Positions 5,195 to 18,866 of a DNA stretch of 19,174 nt are shown here, piece by piece. Position numbers and translations under genes: made by a program. This stretch comes from Paraphysomonas bandaiensis (taxonomy: Eukaryota; Protista; Chrysophyceae), in assembly GCA_965644295.1 (NCBI GenBank), contig CBFFRP010000619.1, forward strand, positions 1 through 19,174, in the 5' to 3' direction. Positions within the stretch are counted from its first letter, which is position 1; the number at the start of each line of letters is the position of its first letter. The notes below the pieces were generated by a model. The model was not told the DNA's origin and ran no database searches. It saw only the letters and a program-made list of their open reading frames with translations.

Positions 5195-6040
5195 TTATAA
5201 TACATTTCTCCACGAATCGATTGAATTTTTAACCAGTTTAGCAACCCCTGCAGTGTTTTTTCCAAATAACATGGTAAAGTGACTGCCTGCAGTTTTGTGT
5301 GTGCTGATAACGCCGGATGAAACTTCCTCCACATCTTCAACACTACAGTTATATGTCGATTGCGAAGCTCTAATATCAAGCACAGGACACGATAACAGGG
5401 GACGCTCACGCTTTTGGCGTTCATAAAACCTTCGCAAGAGTGATGTGCAGTAGGAAAAATGTGAGGCAACCGTTTTCTCAGTAGAAAGTTCCTCACTTTG
5501 CCCATGGAATTGGTTTATCCAAGACCTCACATCATCAGCAGTAGCATTTTCGTCTGCACTTTGCATATCATTCAGATTTGAAGAACCATTCCGTAGAGGA
5601 GCATCAAAAAGTACTATCCCCGCTATTTCCAAAGAACACGCGTCGTCCACATTGTAACGCGTGAGAGTGGGTGTGCTGGAGAGTTTTTCAGCCACAACTG
5701 TAGCCACGACCCCACCATACGACCATCCGCCTAGAACTACCTTTTTCACTGCACTATCGGGCGAATTTCTACCTGATAAAACACACCCGTATGCACTTGC
5801 AAATTTGACAACGAGAGGTAGGCATTTTTCGGCCACTGCATCAATACTGGATTCATTACGCTCAACATTCTTCAGAATCGCCCCGTCATCGAGACAGTAG
5901 ACGGGATACTTCCCATCTAGATGCTCGGACAAGTCAGAGTAACTGTGAATACACTTTAGAGCAATATGGTATTTTCCACTATCAAACTTACCAGAGTCCA
6001 GTTGCGCCTGCAGGATTAAAGAGAAGAAGAGGAACTTCGT
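5195..6040 (-). other. Terminal type I thioesterase domain
   Basis: Spliced sequence PLLLFNPAGATGLCYSDL...PVYCL; nucleophile motif LGGWSYGGVVA; Asp in LFDAP; His in AGSHFTML. Confidence 0.9.
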
Positions 6041-9000
6041 CAGAAGACCCTGCCTGCAGGCAAATGATCTCGTAACCATCACTTTCTATGACCTGCGCGC
6101 CATTTTGAGATGTCTTCGCGCTTCTAGCAGAGATGGTTGCTGCAATACCACATACAGTGGGCGCAGCGAATAGCTCCTGAACACTAATAGACTCTCCACT
6201 ATCACTCCGTATCCGGAATAACAACTGAATTGCCGAAACAGAATTCCCCCTAGGGCGAAAAACGAGTCACTTTGGCAGCATATTTGAGATTCTTCCATTT
6301 GCAACACAGCAGCAAACGATTCCACAATGGCAGCCTCTAATCTCGACGAAGGATCAACTTTTTTAGAATCAAGGATGGATGATGATAAAAATGCAGAGGA
6401 CACTGCATCTGGAAGAGGAAGTCGACTTCGTTCTACCTTTCCGTTGGCACTGAGTGGTATCTCATCTAATACAACAAAATGGCGTGGAATCATATAGTCA
6501 GTAAGTGTATCTTGACATAACTCTCGCAAATTCTGAAACACCTCATCATGACTAGCATCACTATAATCGCTGCTACCCTCTATATCTACAGATCCATTCA
6601 TGTCACTCAATACGAGATACGCACACAGGGCATTATGATGCACTGTCAACGCAGCCGATGATACTCGCTTGTCCTTCATCAGCACACGCTCGATCTCACC
6701 TAGCTCTATGCGGAACCCATTTACCTTGACCTGTGAATCCTCACGCCCCAATATCTCTATATTTCCACAGGGACGCACACGGCCCAAATCGCCAGTGCGA
6801 AACAGCGACTCACCAGTTCGCGGGTGCACAATGAACTGGTATCGAGTCCTCTCGGGGTTATTATAATATCCTTTTGCTACACCTGCCCCACCAATATAGA
6901 TACCACCAGTCACCCATGATTCACAGTTGTCCAGTTCCTCATTGAGAACATACATTGTTTGGTTGCGGAGTGGTCGACCATACGGTATGCTGGACCACCC
7001 CGGTGGTATTCCAGATCCCTCTTTACTCAGCTCAAACATATTCGACCATATTGCCGCTTCTGTCGCCCCGCCCATACTAATGATGCGAATATCGGGACAT
7101 GCAGACACGGCACGTATACGATTTGGAAGAGACAACGGAATCCAGTCTCCACTCATATATACCAGACGCAAGCTAGCAGGGAGCTGAGTATTTGAATACT
7201 CACAGTGTGTCACCATCAACTCCATGAAAGCTGGAACAGTGTCCCATATTGTAATCATCTCTGCTGTCAGAATCCCTATCCATTCTTCAGGATCTGGGGG
7301 GTGTATACAATTAGACGAAGGGAGCACGACCGTGCCGCCGGCGGAGAGCAAGCCGAATATATCATACACCGACAAATCGAAACTTAATGATGACAAGCCA
7401 AACACCCTATCTGACGATGTCACCGAAAATCGCTCATTCAAATCCGCAATAGTATTCACAGCTCCCTGGTGGTGGCAGCACACACCCTTCGGTACACCCG
7501 TAGAACCGGAGGTGTAAATTAGATACGCAAGGTCAGTTGGATCTACTCGTTTTCTACGACACAGAACTGAATCTACATCAGGTGTGTGGTGCTTCCCATG
7601 CCGAGTTATTACTGAGTTCACATCCATGACTGGAATGCTAATTTCGTTAAGCCACTGACAGGACGACAGTACACGAGACTGAGTCAAAACTGCTGCGCAC
7701 TTGCTAAGATCCAGAACCTGAGTAACACGATGCTCCGGCCACGAACGACTATCCATAGGAAGATAGACACATTGAGCCATATGCACACCCAGTACAGCTA
7801 CAACTTGTTCCCAACCCTTATCCATCAAAACTGCCACCACGCTTGACTCAATCAAAGAAGGCACTTTATTGAGCAATTCACTAGCTACTATCGTAGCATA
7901 TCGCTGCATATCAGAGTACATAACGACATCTCTCTCACCCAACTCATCGTAACTTACAACCGCAGGCATAATATCACAATTCGTCGCAGTCTTACATACA
8001 CGAATAAACCCTTCGTGCATGAGATCTTTGCTGAGAGGACATGGAGGTGAAACGGGCACAGGCGATGGAGGGGGAGCGATTGCTTCGGACACAGGGTTCT
8101 TCCACACCTGGGGGTCATCCGAGCAAACCAAATCAAGCATCGCAGAGTACGTCTTGTGCATCCCATGAACTACTTCATCTGGAAAAGTTCCCTCTACTAT
8201 ATCCATTGAAGCACATGCTGTACCGGCGGGGTCTGATTTAATTGCATTGACGCAGGCCGTATGAGGTACTCTTTCAGAGAAGAATCTCTCTTTGAACATC
8301 CAATTTCTTGACGACACTTGCTGATTTCCCTGTTCGACGCCAATCGGAGTTGTGAAAATGAATGGGGCTACCGCCTGAAACGTTTTACCCTGAACTCTAT
8401 TTAGCTCTTGCATAACCTCTACGCCACTCATGCATGCATGCTCTAGATTCTGAGAGAGTTCTTTGGCAACACGTTGGATGGCTACAAGAAAAGACAATGG
8501 TTCGTCTGTGCTCTTTCGGGTCATATCAATGTCACACAGTATGGTCGAACTACAGTTGCCAACAGTCTTATTCACATCGGGGTGCACCTGGTGTCTCAGA
8601 CACTGTAAAATATTTAGCAAAAACCTTTTTGTCCTTGACCAATGGGCAATAGTTAGCGAATAGACAGCAAGCAACATTGCAGGGATGGTTACTGAATGAG
8701 CGGCACAATTAGCTTTCGCGTTATTCCATTCATCCACTGACAGCCACCTGTGCCAATTACAAAACTTTCCAGAGTCAGACAATTGATTAGGTGCTATCAC
8801 TGAAGAAGGCAAATCAGGCCCCGAAGGGAGCGTAGACAATCTCCCAAGCCAAAATTCTTTTGCACGCATGTACTCTGTTGAGAGGGGTAAGGACTCCTCA
8901 ATGGCGTGGGAGTAATCAGCGAACATTAGCCTTGAAGGAGCTGGTAATTCCTTCATGATAGCTTTGCCGCTGTGAGCGCGCCCAGTTTTTCCGTCTACAC

Positions 9001-12000
9001 AAGACAGAGCTGCTCTGTATATGGTTGACAGTTCCTGGCGGAATATGAGATCTCCCATTGCGTCCATTAGGAATAATGAAACTGTGACGTGGATAACAGA
9101 CGTGGTGGGGCCAATATGCGTGACACGAAAATCAAAGAGCGGCCATTTGTACACATTCGGCCCATTGGCAGTCATGTCAGCTCTGGTTTCTAGAGCACTA
9201 GCCTCCGCAGCAGCAGCATCTCCAGTCCACGGTGCAACATGTGACACCTTATACTTTGGACAAAAATTAACCATCATCATTTGTCCACTTGGAAGCACAT
9301 AGGATCGGAAATGGGGATGCCTTCCCACGAAAAGGGTAACAGCTTCCTCGAGTGTATGCACATCAACAGGTCCAGGATCAGAGCCCCCATCCTCCGCACC
9401 CATAACCCATTCGAAATAAATCTGGGGCGCAATGCCTTTCTGGGAATAAGAAGATGTGTGTAGACCGACAAAGTGAGCCTTATTGATACCGATAAGTGGA
9501 TAAGCGTTGAGCATACTATGCTTTCCAGGTTTTATCTCAAAAATAGGTTTACCGCTTGACTTATCACTACTCGTCCCCAGAACAGTGGGACCAGATGACG
9601 CTGCCGACGTGGCAACACCAACAAGCGACTTGATAGTAGGATTGTTGAATATCTGAGGTACTGTGACAACGATTCCTCTCTTTCGAGCATGCGACACTAC
9701 TTGCATTGAACGTAAGGAGTCCCCACCAAGGGAAAAGAAATTAGAAACCGGAAGTATAGAGACAAAATCAATACCAAGAATTTCTGCCCATACATTGCGT
9801 AATGCTCTTGCCAATGGATTGCGGGAGAAATATGCTTCAGAATCGACGTCCGCAATACTATCGTCATAGCAAGACTCCGCATCAGTGATTGTCGGCAAAC
9901 GACTTCTCTCCACTTTTCCGTTTGAACTGAGGGGAAGTTCATCCAAACACATAAAATACCGCGGAATCATATAGTCGGTTAATGAATCCTTACACAGACC
10001 ACGAAGACTTACAATAATGTCGTCATGTGGGGCGGAATAATCATCACCATAATCATTTAATACGAGATACGCACACAGGGCATTATGATGCACTGTCAAC
10101 GCAGCCGATGATACTCGCTTGTCCTTCATCAGCACACGCTCGATCTCACCTAGCTCTATGCGGAACCCATTTACCTTGACCTGTGAATCCTCACGCCCCA
10201 ATATCTCTATATTTCCACAGGGACGCACACGGCCCAAATCGCCAGTGCGAAACAGCGACTCACCAGTTCGCGGGTGCACAATGAACTGGTATCGAGTCCT
10301 CTCGGGGTTATTATAATATCCTTTTGCTACACCTGCCCCACCAATATAGATACCACCAGTCACCCATGATTCACAGTTGTCCAGTTCCTCATTGAGAACA
10401 TACATTGTTTGGTTGCGGAGTGGTCGACCATACGGTATGCTGGACCACCCCGGTGGTATTCCAGATCCCTCTTTACTCAGCTCAAACATATTCGACCATA
10501 TTGCCGCTTCTGTCGCCCCGCCCATACTAATGATGCGAATATCGGGACATGCAGACACGGCACGTATACGATTTGGAAGAGACAACGGAATCCAGTCTCC
10601 ACTCATATATACCAGGCGCAAGCTAGCAGGGAGCTGAGTATTTGAATACTCACAGTGTGTCACCATCAACTCCATGAAAGCTGGAACAGTGTCCCATATT
10701 GTAATCATCTCTGCTGTCAGAATCCCTATCCATTCTTCAGGATCTGGGGGGTGTATACAATTAGACGAAGGGAGCACGACCGTGCCGCCGGCGGAGAGCA
10801 AGCCGAATATATCATACACCGACAAATCGAAACTTAATGATGACAAGCCAAACACCCTATCTGACGATGTCACCGAAAATCGCTCATTCAAATCCGCAAT
10901 AGTATTCACAGCTCCCTGGTGGTGGCAGCACACACCCTTCGGTACACCCGTAGAACCGGAGGTGTAAATTAGATACGCAAGGTCAGTTGGATCTACTCGT
11001 TTTCTACGACACAGAACTGAATCTACATCAGGTGTGTGGTGCTTCCCATGCCGAGTTATTACTGAGTTCACATCCATGACTGGAATGCTAATTTCGTTAA
11101 GCCACTGACAGGACGACAGTACACGAGACTGAGTCAAAACTGCTGCGCACTTGCTAAGATCCAGAACCTGAGTAACACGATGCTCCGGCCACGAACGACT
11201 ATCCATAGGAAGATAGACACATTGAGCCATATGCACACCCAGTACAGCTACAACTTGTTCCCAACCCTTATCCATCAAAACTGCCACCACGCTTGACTCA
11301 ATCAAAGAAGGCACTTTATTGAGCAATTCACTAGCTACTATCGTAGCATATCGCTGCATATCAGAGTACATAACGACATCTCTCTCACCCAACTCATCGT
11401 AACTTACAACCGCAGGCATAATATCACAATTCGTCGCAGTCTTACATACACGAATAAACCCTTCGTGCATGAGATCTTTGCTGAGAGGACATGGAGGTGA
11501 AACAGGCACAGGCGATGGAGGGGGAGCGATTGCTTCGGACACAGGGTTCTTCCACACCTGGGGGTCATCCGAGCAAACCAAATCAAGCATCGCAGAGTAC
11601 GTCTTGTGAATGCTCTCAATTACAGTTGTATCCAGTTTATCAGAAAAAGATAGCTTGCAGGTGAATTTATCCTGGGACGCATGAATGACATTGCAAACTA
11701 AGTAATTAGCAAATATTTCATCAGGATGGATGTCAATACGGTTGATAGAACAATATACTTCCTCAAGTACGAACTTTTTATTACTTTCGCTGTCCATGAT
11801 CATATGCCCACCAGGGACGGCGTGAACGTTGAATGCTCCAGCAGACACTTTTTTCCAATGCCATACAGCTTCTTCACCAATATCACTTCGTCCTACTAGG
11901 GTGGTGTCATCACATCCATAGAAAACAGTCACAGGACAATGCAACTGTTGTGCGCTGTCCGGATCCCACACATAAATGCTCTCTACCAGTAAATCAGCCC

Positions 12001-15000
12001 GTGCAGTGGTAAGGAAAAATTCAGCATCAGAAGTAGAAAGGTCAAGAAAATCTTTAGAATACCAGCCCTGGTTGGTGAGATCCTTCATCAGAGATCCTGT
12101 GTCAGCCAAAGGGTCCGCATCAGATTTGATGTGCATCGGGGCTGCTTCAGCAAGTACAAATATGTGGTCAGGACCAGTACCGTAAGCTTTTGTCACGGCA
12201 AGAGCAAGCTCATAGGCTACAAGAGCACCCATCGAATATCCGAGGAAACAAAAATGATTAGGATGCCCCGATTCTGTCCACAGCATTTCTCGCAATGAAA
12301 TCAACAAGTGGTTTACAATACTAGATAAGTCCTTCATAACAGGTTCAGAAAGTTTCGTGCCGTGACCAGGGAGATCGACACTAACGAGCTCAACATTCCA
12401 CACACTCGTTGCGTCATTGCATTGGGCCATGTTGGTTAGCACGTCTTTCCAACCCGTGAATTGAGCAGAGCTTCCACCAGCAGTGTGGAAACAGAACAGG
12501 GTCATTTTCCTTTTTGCGCCCCCGGCTAAGTAATTACCTTCGTTGTTACTGGACCATTCACAGAATGCCACATTACACATCTCTGACGATTTTTTCACAG
12601 AAGAAATATTTATCCTATTCATAGCAAGTTGCTCCTCCAGCTCGCTCTGTTTTAAGACATCCAATAAGGTCATCTCATACCATGATAGCTTCGAGTGTAA
12701 ACTAAATGTAATGTGCTGGCTGGATGATGCCTTATCCAGAAAATCGATGGAGAAGAGTGATGAGCTACTGTGGCGTTTAACTGCAACTAAAAAGGCGCTC
12801 AACATACACGAATTCAAGGACTCCAACTTATAATAAGAACAATTAGATAAGGCCCTTGTGAACTGAGTCCCAGCAATTGCCTTTACCAATTCAACCCGGG
12901 TACAATGTTTGACTCCCGTTGCAACCTGACGCTCAGGAAGTATAGGATTGGGAAGTCGTGGGTAATGGGGAGTGGTATGAAGCTTTCTAGAAACTTTTCG
13001 CTCAAAGTCCTGCATTGTCGTTTTAAGGCCATCATCTGAATCGATGCAGGACGCAAGAGCCTGAAGCGACATTTCCACTGAACAAAGTAATCCTTCAAGG
13101 AAGGACGAGTTATATTCCAAACATTCTGAAGTTGCAATCAATTGCGCAGACTCACTCCCAACAACAGTTCTGACTGAAAGTGGGCAACCAATGCGATCGA
13201 TCAAGGAGTCATTTTTAATATAAAGATCACCCACAAATTCACAATTGAAAAGCTGCTCATGCTGATAATCAAAAACTACAGGAAACAAAGACCCTTTGAC
13301 AGGGGTAGATGTCAACCTTTGAATCTCTGTTAAAGGAAGATTCTCATGCTTTATGCAATCCAGTAGGTGCTTGTGAACTCTTGCCAAGAATGACTTCACA
13401 TTTTCATCATTGTCCCACGTCAGCCGAACAGGGAACGTATTTATGACAGGACCAATTATTTCTCCTAGGTCTTGTACCGCGGCCGATCGTCCTGTGGCAG
13501 TGCAGCCGTATAAAACTCCTGGTGTGTCAGAGTCTAATGTAACCATAGATTTGTACACCACTGACCATGATGCATGAAAAAAAGATGCCAATGTCACACC
13601 AACTAGACTAGCTGCTTTTCTGCATACAATAAGCAAATCTGATGACAAGTACTTAGCGCAGCGCATAACTTCTTCATCAGAGGTATTAATCATAAGAGGG
13701 GGCATATTATTAAATACATTCGGTATCTTCCATCCTCTCAAACTATTACTCCAAAACGCTTTAAGAAGATCCAGATCGTGGGCTTCCGGAAATTCCAACA
13801 AGCTATTTTCATACATTGCATAGGCTTCGAATGATGGAAACAGCTGACATTGCTCATCGAGGTAGTGGCCTTGTACACTGGCATGTCGCGTGTAGTTATC
13901 ACGTAAACAGTGCAATAAATTGCGTATCGACCAACCGTCCACTATGGCATGGTGCACAGAAAATATCAGTGCATACTCTACTGGTTGACTCTGTGACAAT
14001 TTCACCAAGCTGACTTTAAACGACAGTGGATCTCCCGGATGCACACATCCTGATCGCCGATGCTCCTGTATTTTTGATTTTACAGTCCCATCCTTACTAT
14101 TAGACACTGTAGATGAGAATTCAAACCACGAATATTGAGCCTCATAGTGTGACTTGTTGAGGCCGATTACATGTGGCTTCCACACAAGTTGCATTGGCGG
14201 GGATGCTTCCATATCAAAAGACGATCTCAGAGAGGCGTGGTCAATAATAGTGTCAACCCAAGCGTTACGAAACGCAGCAACATCAAACTTAACACGATTC
14301 ATCCTACCATCAGAAGTGATGTACCATGAAAACGTTTCAAGGAATGTCCCACTAGAAGGGTCTGACATGTAATGAAATAGCATCGCTTGTTGCATACGAG
14401 TTGCAGGAAACATCGCTTCATATTCCTTGGGCATATCAAATGTAACTTTCCTATTGTGTTGTTGCAATTCCAGCAGCAGAGAGTTTGCACGGGATTTTCG
14501 TCTACCCTTTTGCGAACCCAGCTGCAACTGCTGAATGCAAGATGCGACACTCGCCACAGTAGGATATTCAAAGACAAGAGCCGACGGAAGATCAATTCCT
14601 CCAAACTCCCTTGATAGCTCGTTACGCACCTGCACAGCACCTAAAGAGTCAATACCTAGCGAAACCAAACTATCGTGATCATCAAAGTCAATCGACGATG
14701 GCAGAACAGATGATATAGCGCATCGAACAGTTTCCAGAAGTGATGCAGAAAGTGCGATGTTTGAGGCGGATACAGCTGAACCCTGATCAGGTCGATTCTT
14801 TCGGCTAACTGAAAAGAGGCTTCCCTTGTGTCGCCACTTATACAGTGCAGGAGAATAATTAGTGTCCACACGACACGACACTACAGTTGACAATGACCAC
14901 CGACGAAGCCATTGTAAGGCTGAGGTAACCTGCTCCCTTAAGTAAAGAACATCCGAATCACGCTTTCGTTCCGGTAAAATAGAAGAAAACCACCCAAACT

Positions 15001-18000
15001 TCCCGGAAGGAAGATTGCTGGCTGCGGCAATGGCCATGGCAAACTTTTGAAGCGTTTTCCCTGGACCAACTTCGACAATTGCATACCCTTCATTTCGAAA
15101 CGACTTCAATAATCCCATAAAAACATCACAAAATTGAACTGTATTCGTTATGTGACGGGACCAATACTCCACAGTCAAGTCTGATTTTTCCACATCCAAA
15201 CCAGTCACAGTAGATATCATTCTACAGTGGGGTGTCTTCGATTCTATTATAACAGCACCGGCAGCGTTGAGGTTTTTCACAGTCCGTATAAACGCTATAG
15301 CGGCGTTGGATAACAACGGGCTATGAAACGAATGAGTTAACAGAAGTTTCTTTGACGAGCATCCCAGCAAAGATATTACTCGCAGAACATTCTCGTCCAC
15401 TCCAGCGATCACACAGGACAAATGCCCATTCGCCGCGGCTACTGCCGGCCGCAGCTCTGAATTAGGCCACGCTATAGACTCAATCGCCTCCTCCACCATT
15501 GTTTGAGAAGCTCGTACGGCATACATTGCACCACGTTCACCGGTGGAAGATGGCGTATGCTCGACACACCACGCTCGAATTGCAACTAATTGGAGAGCTG
15601 TCTTTATATCAAGAGCGCCTGCGCATACAGCTGCGGCATACTCTCCCAGAGAGTGACCTATTACCACTGTGGGAAAAACGCCACTACTCTCCCAGAGCCG
15701 ACACAGACTCACCTCTAAAGAATACAACATACACTGTGTGTACAGGGCCTCGTTCCTCTGAATCTGAGACTGAGTTTCTATTGAGAGATTGGCGGATAGA
15801 ATATCAACAAGCGAAACGGAATCATCACACCCTAGCAGTTGTCGTATATCACTAAAGCATTGTGAACAGAGTGTAAATGTATTCCGAAAGACTTCTTCAG
15901 AATCGAACAATTCCATACCCAATCCTGTGGACAGCAAATCCGGCACGCCTTGCCCAGTAAATAAGAACACAACCTCTGAGGACGATCCGTCCTCAGAACA
16001 AGAATCTGAATTACCTGAGTTCGCTATGACACTACTGCTATGTTGCTGCAATAACACATGTGAGTTCGTTCCACCCGACCCAAAGGAACTAACACCAGCT
16101 ATTGGTGGCCTTCCTGTTCGAGTTATCAGGGGTGTAGACGTGACCGGAAACTCTACCGCACGCTGTGTAGACAAGTCTATCGCAGGGTTAACTTTTTTGA
16201 AGTGTATATTGGGAGGAACTGAACTGTGTCGAAGTGACATAACAGCTTTAATAAGTCCTGCTAAACCCGCGGCACCCTCTAAGTGCCCTATATTTGACTT
16301 AACTGCACCAAGAATAAGTGCGCTGGCATCACCAGTTGCACAATTATTGAGGAACACATCGCGAATAGCACTGAATTCGATAGGGTCTCCCAGAGCAGTG
16401 CCTGTACCATGTGTTTCAATATAACTGACCTCATCAGGAGCTACCCTCCCTCGGGATAACGCTTCCTGTAGAAGCGCCTGCTGGCATTGTCCATTAGGTG
16501 CAGTGAAAGATGCACTTTTTCCATCCTGATTAGCAGCAGTAGCCTTGATGACTGCTAAAATGGGTGGACCTACACCTGCGGCATAGTCTGCCTCAGCGTC
16601 AGCAAGTCGTCGCAGAACAACTGCACCAGCCCCTTCACCCCTCACGTACCCGTTCGCGGCTGAGTCAAATACTTTGCACTTACCATCAGGAGATAACATT
16701 TGCGAACCTTGCCGAATCTGCACAAAAATATGAATAAGATTTGCACTATTCGCAGAAACATGTGGCTGCTTACCTCCAGTGCATATGGTGCGAGCAATAG
16801 GTCTGCTGACATTACAAGAGCAGTGCTACATTCCCCACCTGCTAGTGCTGAGCAAGCCATGTGTACCGCAACGAGTGAAGACGAGCATGCGGTGTCCACT
16901 ACCATTGAAGGACCAGTAAGATTTAGGAGGAAAGAGAGACGGTTTGCAGCAGCTGCAGTCGATGTTCCAGTGCTTGCGTAGGGTCCAATGGCACACTCAC
17001 TTGTTGTACATATACTGGCATCCACATGTGCACGCATCTCCATTCCTGCCCAGAGCGGGTTGCACATACCAACGTATACCCCTACATCTTTTCCATCCGC
17101 ACTGTTGATGAAATGGTGGGAACAACGCAGTGCTTCATATCCAACTTCCAACAGCAGTCTCTGGTGGGGGTCCATACCGTCCACTTCCGCTGGGCTGAGG
17201 CCAAAGTACCGGGCATCAAAGCTCTCCGCAAAAAAATCATCAATCACTCCAGCGCGGCCGCTGAACCCATCCCATCCCCATGTGTCAGGGATTTCAACAA
17301 CAGCATCCACAGCGTGCTGAAGCATATTGTAGAACTCCTCGGGACTGTTTCCTCCACCCGGGAACCGGCAAGACATACCTACAATGGCGTATTCACAAGT
17401 TGGCGGTAGATGAGTGGAGGTGGCAGGTACAGTTGTTGGAAAAGAAGATATCCGATGCTGCTTAAAATATGACAGCACAGCCCGGGGTGTAGGGTAGTCG
17501 AATAGAAAAGTCGAAGACAGAGGGCCGGCTCCAGTGCGCTCAGAAATCAGAGAAGCTAACTGCTGCATTTGCAACGAGTCAAGTCCAAGAGCCATAAAAG
17601 GTTGACTCAAAAACGAGTCCATTGAAATGTGAGATGCACCATCGGGAGATCCTAAAGTCTCATAAACAAGTTGTGAAAGTGCTTCCGCATCAATACTTTT
17701 TGCGCTTGCTAGCAAACGATGCGTAACACCAGTAGCATTTTGAGAAGAGCGTGATAAACTATACCGTATTAACACACCATTTCCTTCATTCAGCATATCC
17801 TCTGGCCGGAAATCAGGAAGTACAGCAACAACAGTAGCACCGCCATCACAGTGGAAACGAATAGTGGGGTCTCTTAGAGACAGTGCATGCTCGGCAAATG
17901 GTGTACCCGACGACAGGTACGCCGAGCAGCGTGTCACCGCTACAACATCAGATATAGTATCTGTCATAAAAGCCTGAAGAAGCATAAAGTCCCTCAAAGC

Positions 18001-18444
18001 TTTTCCAATTTGCATATTTTTGACGGATGGGTTCACAGCTACCGCTATCAATTGAAGAAACTCACCAGTGGGAGTACCAAACGTGTGATATGTTGAAAAT
18101 TTCATACGGGATATAATATCATCCACAGAATTTATCCTTTGAGTATATATCACGCCCATAACTCGATTGTCTACAGTCGCCACCCAAGTAGTGTGAGAGT
18201 CTGACGTTAATCGAAGGTGAATTTGTTGAGCATTGATACGCATACATTTATCCCAGCAATTCTCCTCGAGCTCCAGTAGATTATCCAGATCATCTAAATT
18301 TGCTTTTCTTATCGCGAATGGCATTTGTTGTACATCTGATATGCATATCTTATCGTTATTTACAAGATCTTGCAGTGTTACGCTCCTCAGAAAGAAACAT
18401 TTCTCAGCAAGAGCACAAAAGATTGGCCACATATCACTGGTCAT
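5195..18444 (-). CDS. Hybrid type I PKS-NRPS megasynthase, ~4381 aa after frameshift repair. Exons 18444-16774, 16717-5992 (frameshift at ~6246-6250), 5942-5195
   Basis: ORFs 16642-18456, 6086-16723, 5988-6224 and 5195-6082 join by two GT-AG introns and one added base into 13146 nt (4382 codons including stop). Recognisable GNAT, ACP, KS, AT, C, TE, A, PCP and Cy motifs occur in colinear order. The first in-frame ATG is at 18444; the ORF-track start at 18456 is a TTG. Confidence 0.93.
5943..5991 (-). other. Spliceosomal intron in the terminal TE, 49 nt, phase 2
   Basis: On the minus strand, TG|GTAAGT...ATTCACAG|T. Removal gives GATGL-C-YSDL, a typical TE N-terminal motif, and deletes the TAA at 5990-5988. 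Confidence 0.9.
6130..6340 (-). other. PCP2 (thiolation domain) split by a 1-nt frameshift
   Basis: DSFFALGG is in one frame and NSVSAIQLLFRIRSDSGESISVQELFAAPTV in another. Adding one base at the G5 run (plus strand C5, 6246-6250) restores FFALGGNS. Confidence 0.88.
6420..8020 (-). other. Adenylation domain A2, Cys-type
   Basis: Motifs LAYLIYTSGSTGVPKG, SFDLSVYDIFG, SGDWIP, GGATEAAIWS, IPYGRPL, FRTGDLG, QVKVNGFRIELGEIE and NGK. FDLSVYD, SGDW and GGATEAxIWS are hallmarks of HMWP2/PchE-like Cys-activating A domains. Confidence 0.92.
6609..8158. repeat. 1550-bp direct repeat, copy covering the A2 core
   Basis: Matches 10059-11608 (offset 3450). I found only two mismatches by eye, 7166/10616 and 8054/11504, both synonymous. 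Confidence 0.95.
8140..9505 (-). other. Heterocyclization (Cy)-type condensation domain with altered signature residues
   Basis: Cy-family blocks RHPHFR...GQM, WPLFDFRVT, FADY, FWLGRLSTLPSGPDLP, RHQVHPDVNKTVG, SGVEVMQEL and PFIFTT are present. There is no HHxxxDG, and the DxxxxDxxS position reads SLFLMDAMG. Confidence 0.85.
9620..9815 (-). other. PCP1 (thiolation domain)
   Basis: NFFSLGGDSLRSMQV...IFNNPTIKSL; Ser codon at 9718-9716. Confidence 0.93.
9890..11470 (-). other. Adenylation domain A1, Cys-type
   Basis: Same core motifs as A2 (identical protein over the repeat); A10 motif LPLSSNGKVER. Confidence 0.92.
10059..11608. repeat. 1550-bp direct repeat, copy covering the A1 core
   Basis: Matches 6609-8158; duplicated ORFs in the ORF track show the same 3450 offset. 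Confidence 0.95.
11745..12510 (-). other. Internal thioesterase domain resembling type II (editing) TEs
   Basis: Motifs LFCFHTAGGSSAQFTGW, VDLPGHG, FLGYSMGALVAYE (Ser codon 12235-12233), RADL, CPVTVFYGCDD, W-K and PGGH (His 11806-11804). Confidence 0.9.
12550..12990 (-). other. Degenerate C-terminal lobe of a Cy-like domain, resuming after the TE at ~11745-11590
   Basis: LHTTPHYPRLP...FTRALSNCSYYKLESLNSCMLSAFLVAVKRHSSSSLFSIDFL aligns by eye with LSTLPSGPDLP...WNNAKANCAAHSVTIPAMLLAVYSLTIAHWSRTKRFLLNIL in the downstream Cy. Confidence 0.6.
13050..14420 (-). other. Condensation domain
   Basis: Motifs FPATRMQQAMLFH, HASLRSSF, HHAIVDGWS (His codon 13954-13952), IIGPVINTFPVR and HENLPLTEIQ. Confidence 0.92.
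14530..14740 (-). other. ACP of the PKS extension module
   Basis: LVSLGIDSLGAVQVRNEL...LVFEYPTV; Ser codon 14647-14645. Confidence 0.92.
14990..15975 (-). other. Acyltransferase domain, probably malonyl-CoA specific
   Basis: VFLFTGQG, GHSLGEYAA (Ser 15652-15650), conserved Arg in VAIRA, HSFHS (close to the malonyl HAFH motif, not YASH) and EVGPG. Confidence 0.9.
16045..17394 (-). other. Ketosynthase domain, catalytic triad intact, interrupted by one intron
   Basis: AIVGMSCRFPGG, MDPHQRLLLE, DTACSSS (Cys 16887-16885), ETHGTGT, KSNIGHLEGAAG and VSSFGSGGTNSH. Confidence 0.96.
16718..16773 (-). other. Spliceosomal intron in the KS, 56 nt, phase 0
   Basis: On the minus strand, GAG|GTAAGC...TTTTTGTGCAG|ATT joins LAPYALE to IRQGSQMLSPDGKCK, restoring a continuous KS. 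Confidence 0.92.
17465..17690 (-). other. Loading ACP
   Basis: PFMALGLDSLQMQQL...FLFDYPTP; Ser codon 17577-17575. Confidence 0.92.
17761..18315 (-). other. GNAT-like PKS loading domain (CurA/GphF/SxtA-type acyl-ACP decarboxylase)
   Basis: IRKANLDDLDNLLELEENCW, GVIYTQRI, LQLIAVAVNP...IGKAL, VVAVTRC, DPTIRFH..GA and FRPED..N.GNGVLIRY match the family pattern. Thr (17934-17932) and His (17853-17851) lie at the catalytic positions. Confidence 0.88.
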
Positions 18445-18866
18445 CGTCTGTACCAATCAACAGTAAAACAATGTTCCAGAGGAGGTCAGGACATTTATAT
18501 ATCGGATAACAATGAAGTCGTAATTAACGAATGAAGCTGACGGACATATACGCATTCCAGTATACATATGGCATATATATACTATATACATTGTACACTG
18601 CCGTATCTGGTGGACCAAGACCATACATACACACTGCTTTGTACTCGTACGCACCAGTGTGGCTGTACAGCATGTTACATCCTCATAAAAACTGTAGTAT
18701 ACCATGTATACGGAGGTATACGCATCACACAGTGGTGTATAGTGTCCAACCAAATGCGGCATTATGAGGAAACTGAAAAATCGCTGCATTAACATCGACA
18801 CGCACATCCTATACACAGTTTCTCTGATGGGAGACAGGCGTCACAAGGTATTACATACACAACAGA
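18445..18866. promoter_or_regulatory. Putative bidirectional promoter region (422 bp) between the PKS-NRPS and MFS genes
   Basis: Head-to-head ATGs at 18444 (-) and 18867 (+); non-coding TA/CA-rich composition. Inferred from gene geometry only. Confidence 0.5.

What the first reader, a model, noticed from the sequence alone, without database searches (positions are those of the whole stretch)
11590..12990. A type-II-like thioesterase appears inserted inside a decayed Cy half-domain between C and A1
Seen: sequence before the TE resembles the C-lobe of the downstream Cy, up to CNVAFCEW (approximately the PFIFTT position). Sequence after the TE resumes with a Cy-tail-like segment (VIESIHKTYSAMLDL versus VVHGMHKTYSAMLDL). 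The TE has GxSxG and a C-terminal His. Known: TEIIs are normally stand-alone editing enzymes, and a TE between C and A is rare. Inference: an ancestral Cy-A-PCP module lost its N-lobe, gained a C domain, and kept the C-lobe as a scaffold carrying a cis editing or release enzyme. The TE could proofread, release an early product, or cyclise acetoacetyl-aminoacyl intermediates.
Basis: partly seen in the sequence, partly recalled or inferred. Interest (0 to 1): 0.8.

Follow-up and report, generated by a model that had tools for sequence, protein, structure and literature searches.

The report
Editing-type thioesterase nested in vestigial cyclization half-domain
In a marine eukaryote's giant PKS-NRPS gene, a type II (proofreading-type) thioesterase is transcribed in frame inside the decayed back half of a heterocyclization domain, between a complete condensation domain and the first adenylation domain; the arrangement is conserved in a few other marine protists and is an unusual case of one assembly-line domain nested inside another.

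Summary
One open frame of 3545 aa on the minus strand (6086-16723) reads KS-AT-ACP-C-X-TE-Y-A1-PCP-Cy-A2. The TE spans residues 1408-1650 (window 11774-12502). By sequence, predicted fold and tree it is type II-like, and its Ser1497/Asp1606/His1640 triad is conserved. Metatranscriptome contigs cover C-X-TE-Y without splicing or indels. In one of those runs a 56-nt GT..AG intron elsewhere in the gene is spliced out, so the TE is neither a separate gene nor an intron.

Six further clusters, all eukaryotic where context or taxonomy is known (Cymbomonas, the diplonemid Artemidia, TARA scaffolds), share the C-X-TE-Y-A order.

That is gene conversion, not a relic. With all converted parts removed, profile comparison still places X and Y collinearly on the C-terminal lobe of Cy domains. 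X also matches an independent bacterial Cy profile; Y does not. X and Y evolve at linker-like rates.

The most likely function is cis proofreading, which is inferred. In-cis TEII domains and the FmoA5 module (C-T-TE-TE-A-T) are known, so this is a new variant, not a new kind. The scan's first stage had already noted the gene and the A1/A2 conversion on this window.

The parts
13049..14431 (-). Complete condensation (C) domain, residues about 765-1225, with an intact HHAIVDG motif at 13934-13954. It has its own C-terminal lobe and terminal helix.
   Evidence: Pfam PF00668. Alignment of about 425 residues to the PvdL and McyB C domains. The terminal strands and helix are conserved among orthologues.
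12503..13048 (-). X, residues 1226-1407: the decayed first part of a Cy-type C-terminal lobe (from the LP..P motif to about strand beta10, CNVAFCEW at 12554-12577).
   Evidence: hhalign of X (7 orthologues) against the family Cy domains gives P=1.3e-6, and against 8 bacterial Cy domains P=2.6e-6. There is no match to the upstream C domain or to PCP. 91 of 100 nearest named ESM-Atlas clusters are Condensation fragments. AF2 predicts the order beta-alpha-alpha-beta-beta-alpha at pLDDT 60-80.
11774..12502 (-). Embedded type II-like thioesterase domain, residues 1408-1650.
   Evidence: PF00975 E=1.1e-19. phmmer to RedJ 1.6e-16, human TE2 and RifR. AF2 pLDDT above 90. VIA-align Z 30.6 to RedJ, 29.6 to ClbQ, 28.7 to BorB and 27.2 to YbtT, against 22 or less for type I TE domains. 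One clade with SH-aLRT 98, nested in free-standing TEII-like proteins.
12233..12235 (-). Codon of the nucleophile Ser1497 (GYSMG).
   Evidence: The serine is nearly invariant in 70 sequences and present in all 7 embedded TEs.
11906..11908 (-). Codon of the triad Asp1606.
   Evidence: Invariant column D381 of alignment A3.
11804..11806 (-). Codon of the triad His1640.
   Evidence: Invariant column H415 of alignment A3.
11474..11773 (-). Y, residues 1651-1750: the last strands and terminal helix of the Cy-type lobe plus the Pro-rich linker to A1. Only 11609-11773 lies outside the gene-converted block.
   Evidence: hhalign of Y, with converted parts removed, against the family Cy domains gives P=2.4e-5 at Cy columns 351-470, directly following X's match. 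It is not significant against bacterial Cy domains or by ESM features. AF2 predicts beta-beta-alpha.
10053..11608 (-). Copy 1 of the 1556-bp internal repeat: the tail of Y, the linker and most of A1.
   Evidence: 99.74% identical to 6603-8158. A block of 517 identical residues at 1706 and 2856. RNA contigs branch at 11608 into the other copy's flank.
6603..8158 (-). Copy 2 of the repeat: the tail of the real Cy domain, the linker and most of A2.
9914..11473 (-). Adenylation domain A1, residues 1751-2270. It carries the FDLSVYD and GGATEA motifs that I recall as typical of Cys-activating A domains.
   Evidence: PF00501 and PF13193. Motifs located. The Cys assignment rests on my own knowledge and was not computed.
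8099..9526 (-). Genuine downstream Cy domain, residues 2400-2875, used as the reference for X and Y.
   Evidence: phmmer to BmdB-Cy2 (5T3E) 1.2e-31, and to EpoB, HMWP2 and PchE.
16718..16773 (-). 56-nt GT..AG spliceosomal intron inside the KS domain. It served as the positive control that the contigs of run X5 derive from spliced RNA.
   Evidence: Sequence. A spliced contig in run X5 joins 16717 to 16774.

Best explanation
Gene and layout. The window carries one intron-containing eukaryotic PKS-NRPS gene with the order (GNAT-like)-ACP-KS-AT-ACP-C-[Cy' front part]-TE-[Cy' back part]-A1-PCP-Cy-A2-PCP-TE. Cy' is the vestigial C-terminal lobe of a heterocyclization-type domain. It has no N-lobe and has lost the Thr/Asp cyclodehydration dyad.

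Position of the TE. A thioesterase of the free-standing type II family sits in Cy' at about the position of the 'latch'. In intact Cy domains the latch is the loop and strand between beta10 (PVVFTS) and beta12 (QVxLD) that reaches over to the N-lobe.

Origin. The insertion happened once, in the ancestor of a small family found in marine eukaryotes.

Proposed mechanism. This step is inferred. The domain works like YbtT, PchC, ClbQ or RifR, but in cis. Ser1497, activated by His1640 and Asp1606, attacks thioesters on the phosphopantetheine arms of the synthase's own carrier domains. Water then releases stalled or wrong acyl or aminoacyl groups, for example acetyl left by decarboxylation without condensation, or mis-primed or mis-loaded units, and so frees the carrier. 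Fusion guarantees 1:1 co-expression in a eukaryote that has no operons.

Role of the Cy' remnant. This is also inferred. It is kept mainly as the structural neighbour and linker of A1, whose sequence is repeatedly overwritten by that of A2. The conversion tracts run into the Cy' tail because that tail is homologous to the real Cy tail.
For: Shown:
- The frame is continuous and the domain order is as stated.
- Contigs from RNA-library runs (three metatranscriptomes, one of them polyA-selected, plus X1, whose RNA status is only the tool's guess) lie collinear over 11300-13869 with no joint and no indel. The KS intron is spliced out in run X5.
- The TE is type II-like by sequence, by predicted fold and by tree. 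Of 10,323 library hits, the best ones outside the family are mostly stand-alone proteins of about 250 aa.
- The triad is conserved in all 7 embedded copies at about 25-35% identity.
- The same C-X-TE-Y-A order occurs in P0001/P0153, P0003, P0004/P0154 (Cymbomonas), P0005, P0006/P0155 (Artemidia) and P0157 (TARA). P0005 and P0157 have eukaryotic neighbour genes.
- After all converted segments are removed, X and Y are collinear with the Cy C-lobe. XY against the family Cy domains gives P=5e-10, and against independent bacterial Cy domains P=1.4e-6. There is no signal to the upstream C domain, to PCP, or in reversed and shuffled controls.
- ESM features of X point to Condensation-fold fragments.
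- The latch is defined as strand 11 plus the preceding loop, lying between the dyad Thr and Asp, in PMC9547227.
- In-cis editing TEII domains are experimentally established for CylH (PMC5707447).
Against: - No activity data exist, so editing cannot be told apart from release or transfer by sequence.
- The TE is less conserved than the other catalytic domains (35% identity to the nearest orthologue, against 44-64%).
- X and Y are conserved no better than a linker (26% and 14%), so a structural role is not demonstrated.
- Pfam's Condensation model does not detect X or Y.
- Y alone fails against bacterial Cy domains and by ESM features.
- The hhalign columns near the insertion point have low confidence, so 'at the latch' is approximate.
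- AF2 confidence for X and Y is only 50-85, and I could not check whether the two pieces pack together. Fold searches were filled by the TE.
Confidence: 0.55

Rival explanations
1. The embedded TE is a programmed off-loading or branching enzyme, not a proofreader. It would release or cyclise an early intermediate, for example acetoacetyl-Cys from PCP1 or acetoacetyl from ACP1. The gene would then make two products, or the TE would pass the chain on through an acyl-enzyme.
For: - Some type II-like TEs act on pathway intermediates. ClbQ and RedJ are among the closest structural neighbours.
- AjuTE and JerTE are in-cis type II-like domains implicated in lactonisation or ring formation (PMC5707447).
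- The gene already has a separate terminal TE that is very distant from the embedded one, so the two need not be redundant.
Against: - The TE has no carrier domain directly upstream, unlike releasing TEs and unlike FmoA5 (C-T-TE-TE-A-T).
- The downstream modules A1-PCP-Cy-A2-PCP-TE are conserved together with it in every full-length orthologue. That argues the chain normally goes on.
- The nearest sequence relatives are overwhelmingly free-standing TEII-sized proteins.
Confidence: 0.2
2. X and Y are not remnants of a Cy lobe. X is a fast-evolving linker, and Y only looks Cy-like because conversion tracts from the Cy-A2 junction have repeatedly spilled upstream of A1. On this view the TE was simply inserted into the C-A linker.
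For: - Identical A1/A2 blocks of 476-533 residues occur in four lineages, and each has a different 5' boundary inside Y.
- Y without its converted parts fails against bacterial Cy domains and by ESM features.
- Pfam sees nothing in X or Y.
- X and Y diverge at linker-like rates.
Against: - X lies upstream of the TE, out of reach of tracts that start in A.
- X matches both the family's Cy domains and unrelated bacterial Cy domains at P of about 1e-6 to 3e-6, at the correct place (the start of the C-lobe). It shows no signal to C, to PCP, or in reversed and shuffled controls.
- 91 of 100 ESM neighbours of X are Condensation fragments.
- P0001 and P0005 have no identical A1/A2 block yet keep both X and Y.
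- Homology-dependent conversion into Y itself presupposes that Y resembled the Cy tail.
Confidence: 0.15
3. The embedded TE is an inactive relic or an assembly or annotation artefact: a separate gene, a retained intron, or a chimeric contig.
For: - This contig has a 1-base frameshift in PCP2.
- A second contig of the locus (C250) carries 85 indels, so the assembly is imperfect.
- The repeat at 11608 breaks short-read contigs.
Against: - No indel or joint is seen in RNA-derived contigs across 11300-13869.
- The TE is in frame in two contigs of this genome and in six independent clusters from other assemblies and transcriptomes.
- The triad is intact in all copies.
- The PCP2 frameshift is absent from both other contigs.
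Confidence: 0.03

Closest known systems
FmoA5 module of the JBIR-34/35 NRPS (C-T-TE-TE-A-T), as described in PMC5707447
   Same: Thioesterase domains sit inside a module between C and A. The second TE is type II-like. The pathway makes azoline-containing products.
   Different: - In FmoA5 the TEs follow a carrier (T) domain and are tandem.
- Here there is a single TE with no upstream carrier (X against PCP: no similarity), set between two pieces of a Cy-type C-lobe.
- FmoA5 is bacterial. This family has been found only in eukaryotes.
- I did not compare sequences with FmoA5 directly.
In-cis editing type II TE domain of CylH (cylindrocyclophane PKS), and the AjuTE and JerTE domains (PMC5707447)
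   Same: A type II-family thioesterase is fused into an assembly-line protein. For CylH, editing activity rather than termination was shown experimentally.
   Different: Those domains are C-terminal appendages after an ACP. This one is internal and nested inside another domain's remnant.
Free-standing type II thioesterases of thiazoline and PKS-NRPS pathways: YbtT, ClbQ, RedJ, RifR, BorB, PchC
   Same: They share the fold, the Ser-Asp-His triad and the size. They are the top structural and sequence matches. They belong to Cys/thiazoline assembly lines like this one.
   Different: They are separate proteins acting in trans. This one is covalently embedded. PchC is cited from my own knowledge, not from a tool hit.
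Interrupted adenylation domains, with methyltransferase or epimerase-like inserts in A, e.g. PchE (PMC8807600, PMC9056781)
   Same: One NRPS domain is inserted into a loop of another, giving a nested architecture.
   Different: - The host there is a working A domain. Here the host is a condensation-fold half-domain that has lost its N-lobe and its catalytic residues.
- The phrase 'interrupted condensation' occurs in none of the roughly 8.4 million full texts searched.
C-lobe-to-C-lobe exchange units (XUC concept; natural recombination inside C domains). From my own knowledge, not checked here.
   Same: The unit [C-lobe]-A-PCP behaves as one evolutionary block. Here X-TE-Y-A-PCP-Cy-A-PCP-TE is the conserved cassette behind variable upstream parts: PKS plus C in most, A-PCP-C-C in Artemidia.
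   Different: The upstream partner here is a complete C domain, not just an N-lobe. The Cy' lobe is therefore supernumerary.

Membership tests
Type II thioesterase (alpha/beta-hydrolase, Pfam PF00975 Thioesterase) | Significant match to the family model over most of its length | tested here: met
   PF00975 scores 72 bits against a cut-off of 26.4, covering profile positions 2-215 of 226. The whole-genome scan gave 78 bits.
Type II thioesterase (alpha/beta-hydrolase, Pfam PF00975 Thioesterase) | Ser (GxSxG), Asp and His catalytic triad | tested here: met
   S1497, D1606 and H1640 lie in columns that are invariant or nearly invariant in 70 sequences, and all three are present in all 7 embedded copies.
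Type II thioesterase (alpha/beta-hydrolase, Pfam PF00975 Thioesterase) | Closer to known TEIIs than to chain-terminating type I TE domains | tested here: met
   The top 7 VIA-align matches are RedJ, ClbQ, BorB, YbtT, 7E3Z, TesA and human TE2 (Z 22-31). Type I TE domains follow at Z 22 or less. In the tree the embedded TEs are nested among free-standing proteins, and the family's own terminal TEs lie on a distant branch with support 100 (quick tree).
Type II thioesterase (alpha/beta-hydrolase, Pfam PF00975 Thioesterase) | Free-standing protein acting in trans | tested here: not met
   It is embedded in frame in a 3545-aa ORF and in the mRNA. It is therefore a TEII-type domain, not a TEII protein.
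Type II thioesterase (alpha/beta-hydrolase, Pfam PF00975 Thioesterase) | Hydrolytic editing of mis-acylated carrier proteins | not testable with these tools
   This needs enzymology. The complex prediction with PCP1 gave no verdict.
NRPS heterocyclization (Cy) domain | N-terminal lobe with the DxxxxD motif | tested here: not met
   Profile matches of X and Y start at Cy column about 200-220. What lies upstream is the end of a complete C domain.
NRPS heterocyclization (Cy) domain | C-terminal lobe homologous to that of Cy domains | tested here: met
   XY against the family Cy domains gives P=5e-10 with 96.6% probability. X against bacterial Cy domains gives P=2.6e-6. The matches are collinear. 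The order of AF2 secondary-structure elements fits. Y alone is weak, and the 3D packing was not verified.
NRPS heterocyclization (Cy) domain | Cyclodehydration dyad: Thr of PVVFTS and Asp of QVxLD (PMC9547227) | tested here: not met
   The aligned positions read NVAFCEW and YLVCNVIH in this protein and vary among orthologues. The alignment there has low confidence.
NRPS heterocyclization (Cy) domain | Detected by the Pfam Condensation model PF00668 | tested here: not met
   There is no PF00668 hit in X or Y of this protein or of five orthologues, even at E up to 10.
Internal-TE NRPS module of the FmoA5 type (C-T-TE-TE-A-T) | Carrier domain immediately upstream of the TE, and tandem TEs | tested here: not met
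   X against the PCP alignment scores 9.6, P=0.63. There is a single TE.

The most novel reading that the evidence does not exclude
The vestigial Cy lobe is not just a spacer. It keeps the donor-carrier docking face of a condensation-fold domain. With the TE grafted where the latch and N-lobe used to be, the two form a new composite 'proofreading domain' that docks a carrier on the old Cy surface and feeds its thioester to the TE. This would be the first functional 'interrupted condensation-fold domain'. It would have arisen in eukaryotes, possibly by exonisation of a TEII gene in an intron at the latch position, and then spread among unrelated marine protists.
Probability: 0.15. Interest if true: 0.8.

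Novelty: new variant of a known kind. Interest (0 to 1): 0.6.

Why it matters
- Thioesterase position is used to predict where assembly lines end. An internal, probably proofreading, TE nested in a half-domain would mislead automatic annotation and product prediction.
- It shows that condensation-fold domains, not only adenylation domains, can host an inserted domain. It also shows that a lone C-terminal lobe can persist next to its A domain, which bears on where NRPSs can be cut and rejoined in engineering.
- The family is expressed in the sea. It appears in several marine metatranscriptomes and occurs in a chlorophyte, a diplonemid and this plankton genome. It therefore points to an undescribed, probably thiol- or thiazoline-containing small molecule made by marine eukaryotes.

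Tried and rejected
- AF2 of X-TE-Y with a 2-sequence alignment gave pLDDT 37.6 and was useless.
- Fold searches with the better model (pdb, pdb_via_wide) were filled entirely by alpha/beta-hydrolases. They therefore say nothing about the fold of X and Y.
- The complex prediction of X-TE-Y with PCP1 returned 'no answer' (score 0.01). It counts neither for nor against binding.
- Pfam scans of X and Y from six proteins at E up to 10 found no Condensation hit.
- NCBIfam gave only sub-threshold hydrolase families.
- ESM-Atlas features for the unconverted Y of P0157 returned unrelated families below 0.9.
- The word-indexed protein search with the region 1226-1720 found only 2 proteins. With the Cy domain it found only fragments of the same family.
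- The genome-contig scan gave one bacterial locus. A bacterial Cy profile therefore had to be gathered through the genome search.
- Rejected: the idea that contig C250 is a pseudogene copy. Its 85 scattered single-base indels at 98.6% identity look like an unpolished duplicate contig.
- Rejected: X as a degenerate carrier domain.
- The organism's name is withheld by the tools and was not pursued.

Full report
**Setting**

The window is a whole 19,174-bp contig (C619) of a 62.5-Mb genome in 669 contigs. A 3545-aa frame runs on the minus strand from 16723 to 6086. Pfam gives this order:
- KS (C-terminal part), AT, ACP
- C, residues 770 to at least 1155
- a gap with no Pfam hit
- Thioesterase, residues 1408-1649
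- a second gap
- A1, residues 1774-2270
- PCP, a Cy/C domain and A2

The N-terminal half of the KS, an ACP and a weak GNAT-like hit lie in the upstream frame 16642..18456. The two frames are joined by a 56-nt GTAAGC...CAG intron. The gene is therefore eukaryotic. Two other contigs (C250 and C367) are 98.6% and 99.3% identical duplicates of parts of the locus.

**Is the TE really there, in frame and expressed?**

Yes.
- The domain passes Pfam's threshold (72 bits against 26.4).
- It has GYS(1497)MG, Asp1606 and His1640.
- Contigs from four public RNA-library runs were laid on 11300-17100. Three are marine metatranscriptomes, one of them polyA-selected. The fourth (X1) is only guessed by the tool to be RNA.
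- These contigs cover the C tail, X, the TE and Y collinearly. Examples are 12117-13275, 11579-12115, 12261-13158 and 11763-12425. None shows a joint or an indel.
- The only joint in the whole stretch is the KS intron (16717 joined to 16774, CT..AC on the plus strand), seen in run X5. That shows the contigs of X5 derive from spliced RNA.

**What kind of TE is it?**

- The best solved relatives by sequence are RedJ, human thioesterase 2, RifR and the surfactin TEII.
- With a 70-sequence alignment, AF2 models the domain at pLDDT above 90.
- The closest solved folds are RedJ (Z 30.6), ClbQ (29.6), BorB (28.7), YbtT (27.2), TesA and human TE2. Type I TE domains come only below these.
- An exhaustive profile search of 1.84 billion representatives found 10,323 hits. 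Beyond a handful of orthologues, the best are stand-alone proteins of about 250 aa.
- In a quick maximum-likelihood tree the seven embedded TEs form one clade (SH-aLRT 98) nested among those stand-alone proteins. The terminal TEs of the same synthases sit on a distant branch with support 100.
- The domain is type II-like, and the insertion happened once.

**Orthologues**

The same C-X-TE-Y-A-PCP-Cy-A-PCP-TE order occurs in these clusters:
- P0001/P0153, a EukProt transcript
- P0003, an ENA fragment
- P0004/P0154, Cymbomonas tetramitiformis KAK3241698.1, a chlorophyte
- P0005, a Logan contig
- P0006/P0155, Artemidia motanka, a diplonemid
- P0157, TARA scaffolds, about 51% identical to this protein, with the same split of the KS

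P0005 and P0157 are flanked by eukaryotic genes such as Argonaute/Piwi, RabGAP and EMP70. The parts upstream of X vary. P0001 has no AT, and Artemidia has A-PCP-C-C instead of a PKS. The conserved cassette therefore begins at X.

- From residue 1706 (HKTYSAML) onward, the sequence belongs to a 1556-bp block that is 99.74% identical to the Cy-tail/A2 region (10053-11608 = 6603-8158).
- Identical A1/A2 blocks of 476-533 residues also exist in Cymbomonas, Artemidia and P0157. Each has a different 5' boundary inside Y. P0001 and P0005 have none.
- This is recurrent intragenic gene conversion, so the near-identity says nothing about an ancient relic.

I therefore removed every converted segment and compared profiles with hhalign.

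| Query | Target | Score | P | Matched target columns |
|---|---|---|---|---|
| X (7 orthologues) | family's genuine Cy domains (6) | 51.6 | 1.3e-6 | 209-378 |
| Y (unconverted) | family's genuine Cy domains (6) | 40.1 | 2.4e-5 | 351-470 |
| X+Y joined | family's genuine Cy domains (6) | 76.3 | 5e-10 | 219-466 (199 collinear columns) |
| X | 8 bacterial Cy domains | 49.1 | 2.6e-6 | 203-364 |
| X+Y joined | 8 bacterial Cy domains | 52.7 | 1.4e-6 | 198-416 |
| Y | 8 bacterial Cy domains | 13.9 | not significant | - |

- Controls behaved as expected. Reversed alignments scored 11-16. The 30 column shuffles scored 18 or less. The upstream C domain scored 12-13. A PCP alignment scored about 9.5.
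- The bacterial Cy profile was taken from unrelated genomes and is independent of this family.
- The confident core of the X match is the start of the lobe: the LP..P motif and the 'vT..llaaY..vL.rWS...rF' helix-strand region.
- Language-model features of X have Condensation fragments as 91 of the 100 nearest named clusters, with a top score of 0.93. The rest come from related acyltransferase families. The same test on an unconverted Y gave nothing.
- AF2 predicts beta-alpha-alpha-beta-beta-alpha for X at pLDDT 60-80, and beta-beta-alpha for Y at 57-85. This fits the published order of the Cy C-terminal subdomain (PMC9547227).
- Pfam does not detect X or Y.
- The upstream C domain is complete. 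It aligns over about 425 residues to the PvdL and McyB C domains and ends with the usual strands and helix.

X plus Y is therefore a supernumerary, N-lobe-less Cy-type half-domain.

**Where the TE sits**

- Family alignments put the end of X at the strand equivalent to PVVFTS. The sequences there are CNVAFCEW here, PVLFSVAS in Cymbomonas and APFIFTT in the real Cy.
- They put the start of Y's match at the QVxLD-equivalent strand.
- In intact Cy domains the segment between these two strands is the 'latch': strand 11 plus its preceding loop, which is donated to the N-lobe sheet. It lies between the catalytic Thr and Asp (PMC9547227).
- The TE thus replaces, or sits in, the element that has lost its partner.
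- This placement is approximate, because the alignment columns near the junction have low confidence.
- The dyad positions are not conserved in X and Y.

**Constraint**

Identity to the nearest orthologue P0157, by region:

| Region | Identity |
|---|---|
| C | 44% |
| TE | 35% |
| A1 | 64% |
| Genuine Cy C-lobe | 75% |
| X | 26% |
| Unconverted Y | 14% |
| AT-ACP linker | 25% |

X and Y are retained in every orthologue but evolve like a linker. They are decayed, and any role is structural at most.

**Mechanism: shown and inferred**

Shown:
- The TE has type II identity and an intact triad.
- It arose from a single origin.
- It is expressed in frame.
- It is nested in a remnant of a Cy-type lobe.

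Inferred:
- The domain acts in cis like YbtT, PchC, ClbQ or RifR. It would hydrolyse stalled or wrong thioesters from the synthase's own carriers.
- In-cis editing by a type II-like TE is experimentally documented for CylH (PMC5707447).
- Fusion is a sensible outcome for a pathway living in a eukaryote without operons.
- The Cy' remnant may persist because A1 is continually overwritten by A2, and A2 normally sits against a Cy C-lobe. The conversion tracts end inside Y.
- I give cis-editing about even odds, programmed early release or transfer about 0.2, and an inactive relic or artefact a few per cent.

**Comparison with what is known**

- In-cis type II TE domains are known (CylH, AjuTE, JerTE).
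- One bacterial NRPS module, FmoA5, has internal TEs between C and A in the order C-T-TE-TE-A-T (PMC5707447). 'A TE between C and A' is therefore rare but not new.
- What differs here is fourfold. There is no carrier before the TE. The TE is nested in a split, vestigial condensation-fold lobe. The family has been found only in eukaryotes. It is coupled to concerted evolution of the two A domains.
- Nested domains are known for A domains ('interrupted' A domains). I found no report for condensation-fold domains, and the phrase 'interrupted condensation' occurs in none of the full texts searched.
- I class it as a new variant of a known kind.

**Earlier notes of this scan**

First-stage notes on this same window had already flagged the whole gene (s1-443460), the A1/A2 conversion (s1-443722), the odd Cy signatures (s1-443615) and the intron and GNAT (s1-443614). 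I tested the conversion and the intron here and they hold.

Noticed in passing
window 6603-8158 and 10053-11608; also P0154 (1411/2542), P0155 (1858/2919), P0157 (1730/2871): A1 and A2 share blocks of 476-533 identical residues in four independent lineages, and each lineage has a different 5' boundary. P0001 and P0005 have no such block. This looks like recurrent concerted evolution of the two adenylation domains within one gene.
   Followed up: partly
window about 6245-6252 (minus strand, PCP2 motif FFALGGNS): This contig has a homopolymer run one base shorter than contigs C250 and C367. That shifts the frame exactly at the phosphopantetheine-serine motif and causes the stop at 6086. Both other contigs read GGNS in frame, so the break is probably a contig error or an allele.
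   Followed up: yes
G000 contig C250 1-15114 and C367 1-8655, against the window: Two more contigs duplicate parts of this locus at 98.6% and 99.3% identity. C250 carries 85 scattered 1-4-base indels over 10 kb and looks like an unpolished duplicate, not a pseudogene.
   Followed up: partly
window about 5990-6060 (minus strand): The N-terminus of the terminal TE (…LLLFNPAGATGLW) ends at a GTAAGT donor, and the rest of the domain continues in ORF 5195..6082. The TARA orthologue P0157 breaks at the same place. This is a probable conserved intron, not confirmed with reads.
   Followed up: no
window 8099-9526 (downstream Cy domain, residues 2400-2875): The genuine Cy domain reads DAMGD where DxxxxD is expected. 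It reads VPHTACVNAI where bacterial Cy domains, P0005 and P0155 have TPxVxLDxQ, so the cyclodehydration Asp seems absent here and in P0157, P0154 and P0001. The thiazoline-forming step may be altered.
   Followed up: no
P0155 (Artemidia motanka) residues about 1-1430; P0001 residues 561-698: The parts upstream of the conserved X-TE-Y-A-PCP-Cy-A-PCP-TE cassette differ between species. Artemidia has A-PCP-C-C instead of a PKS, and P0001 has no AT between KS and ACP.
   Followed up: no
window 11300-17100, runs X5, X6, X7, X11 and others: Near-identical transcripts of this gene occur in marine metatranscriptomes from several independent studies, one of them polyA-selected. The gene therefore appears to be expressed in natural plankton communities.
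   Followed up: partly
P0159: A 443-aa fragment 62% identical to the Cy domain is labelled Ectocarpus fasciculatus in NCBI. The family may also occur in, or contaminate, a brown-alga data set.
   Followed up: no
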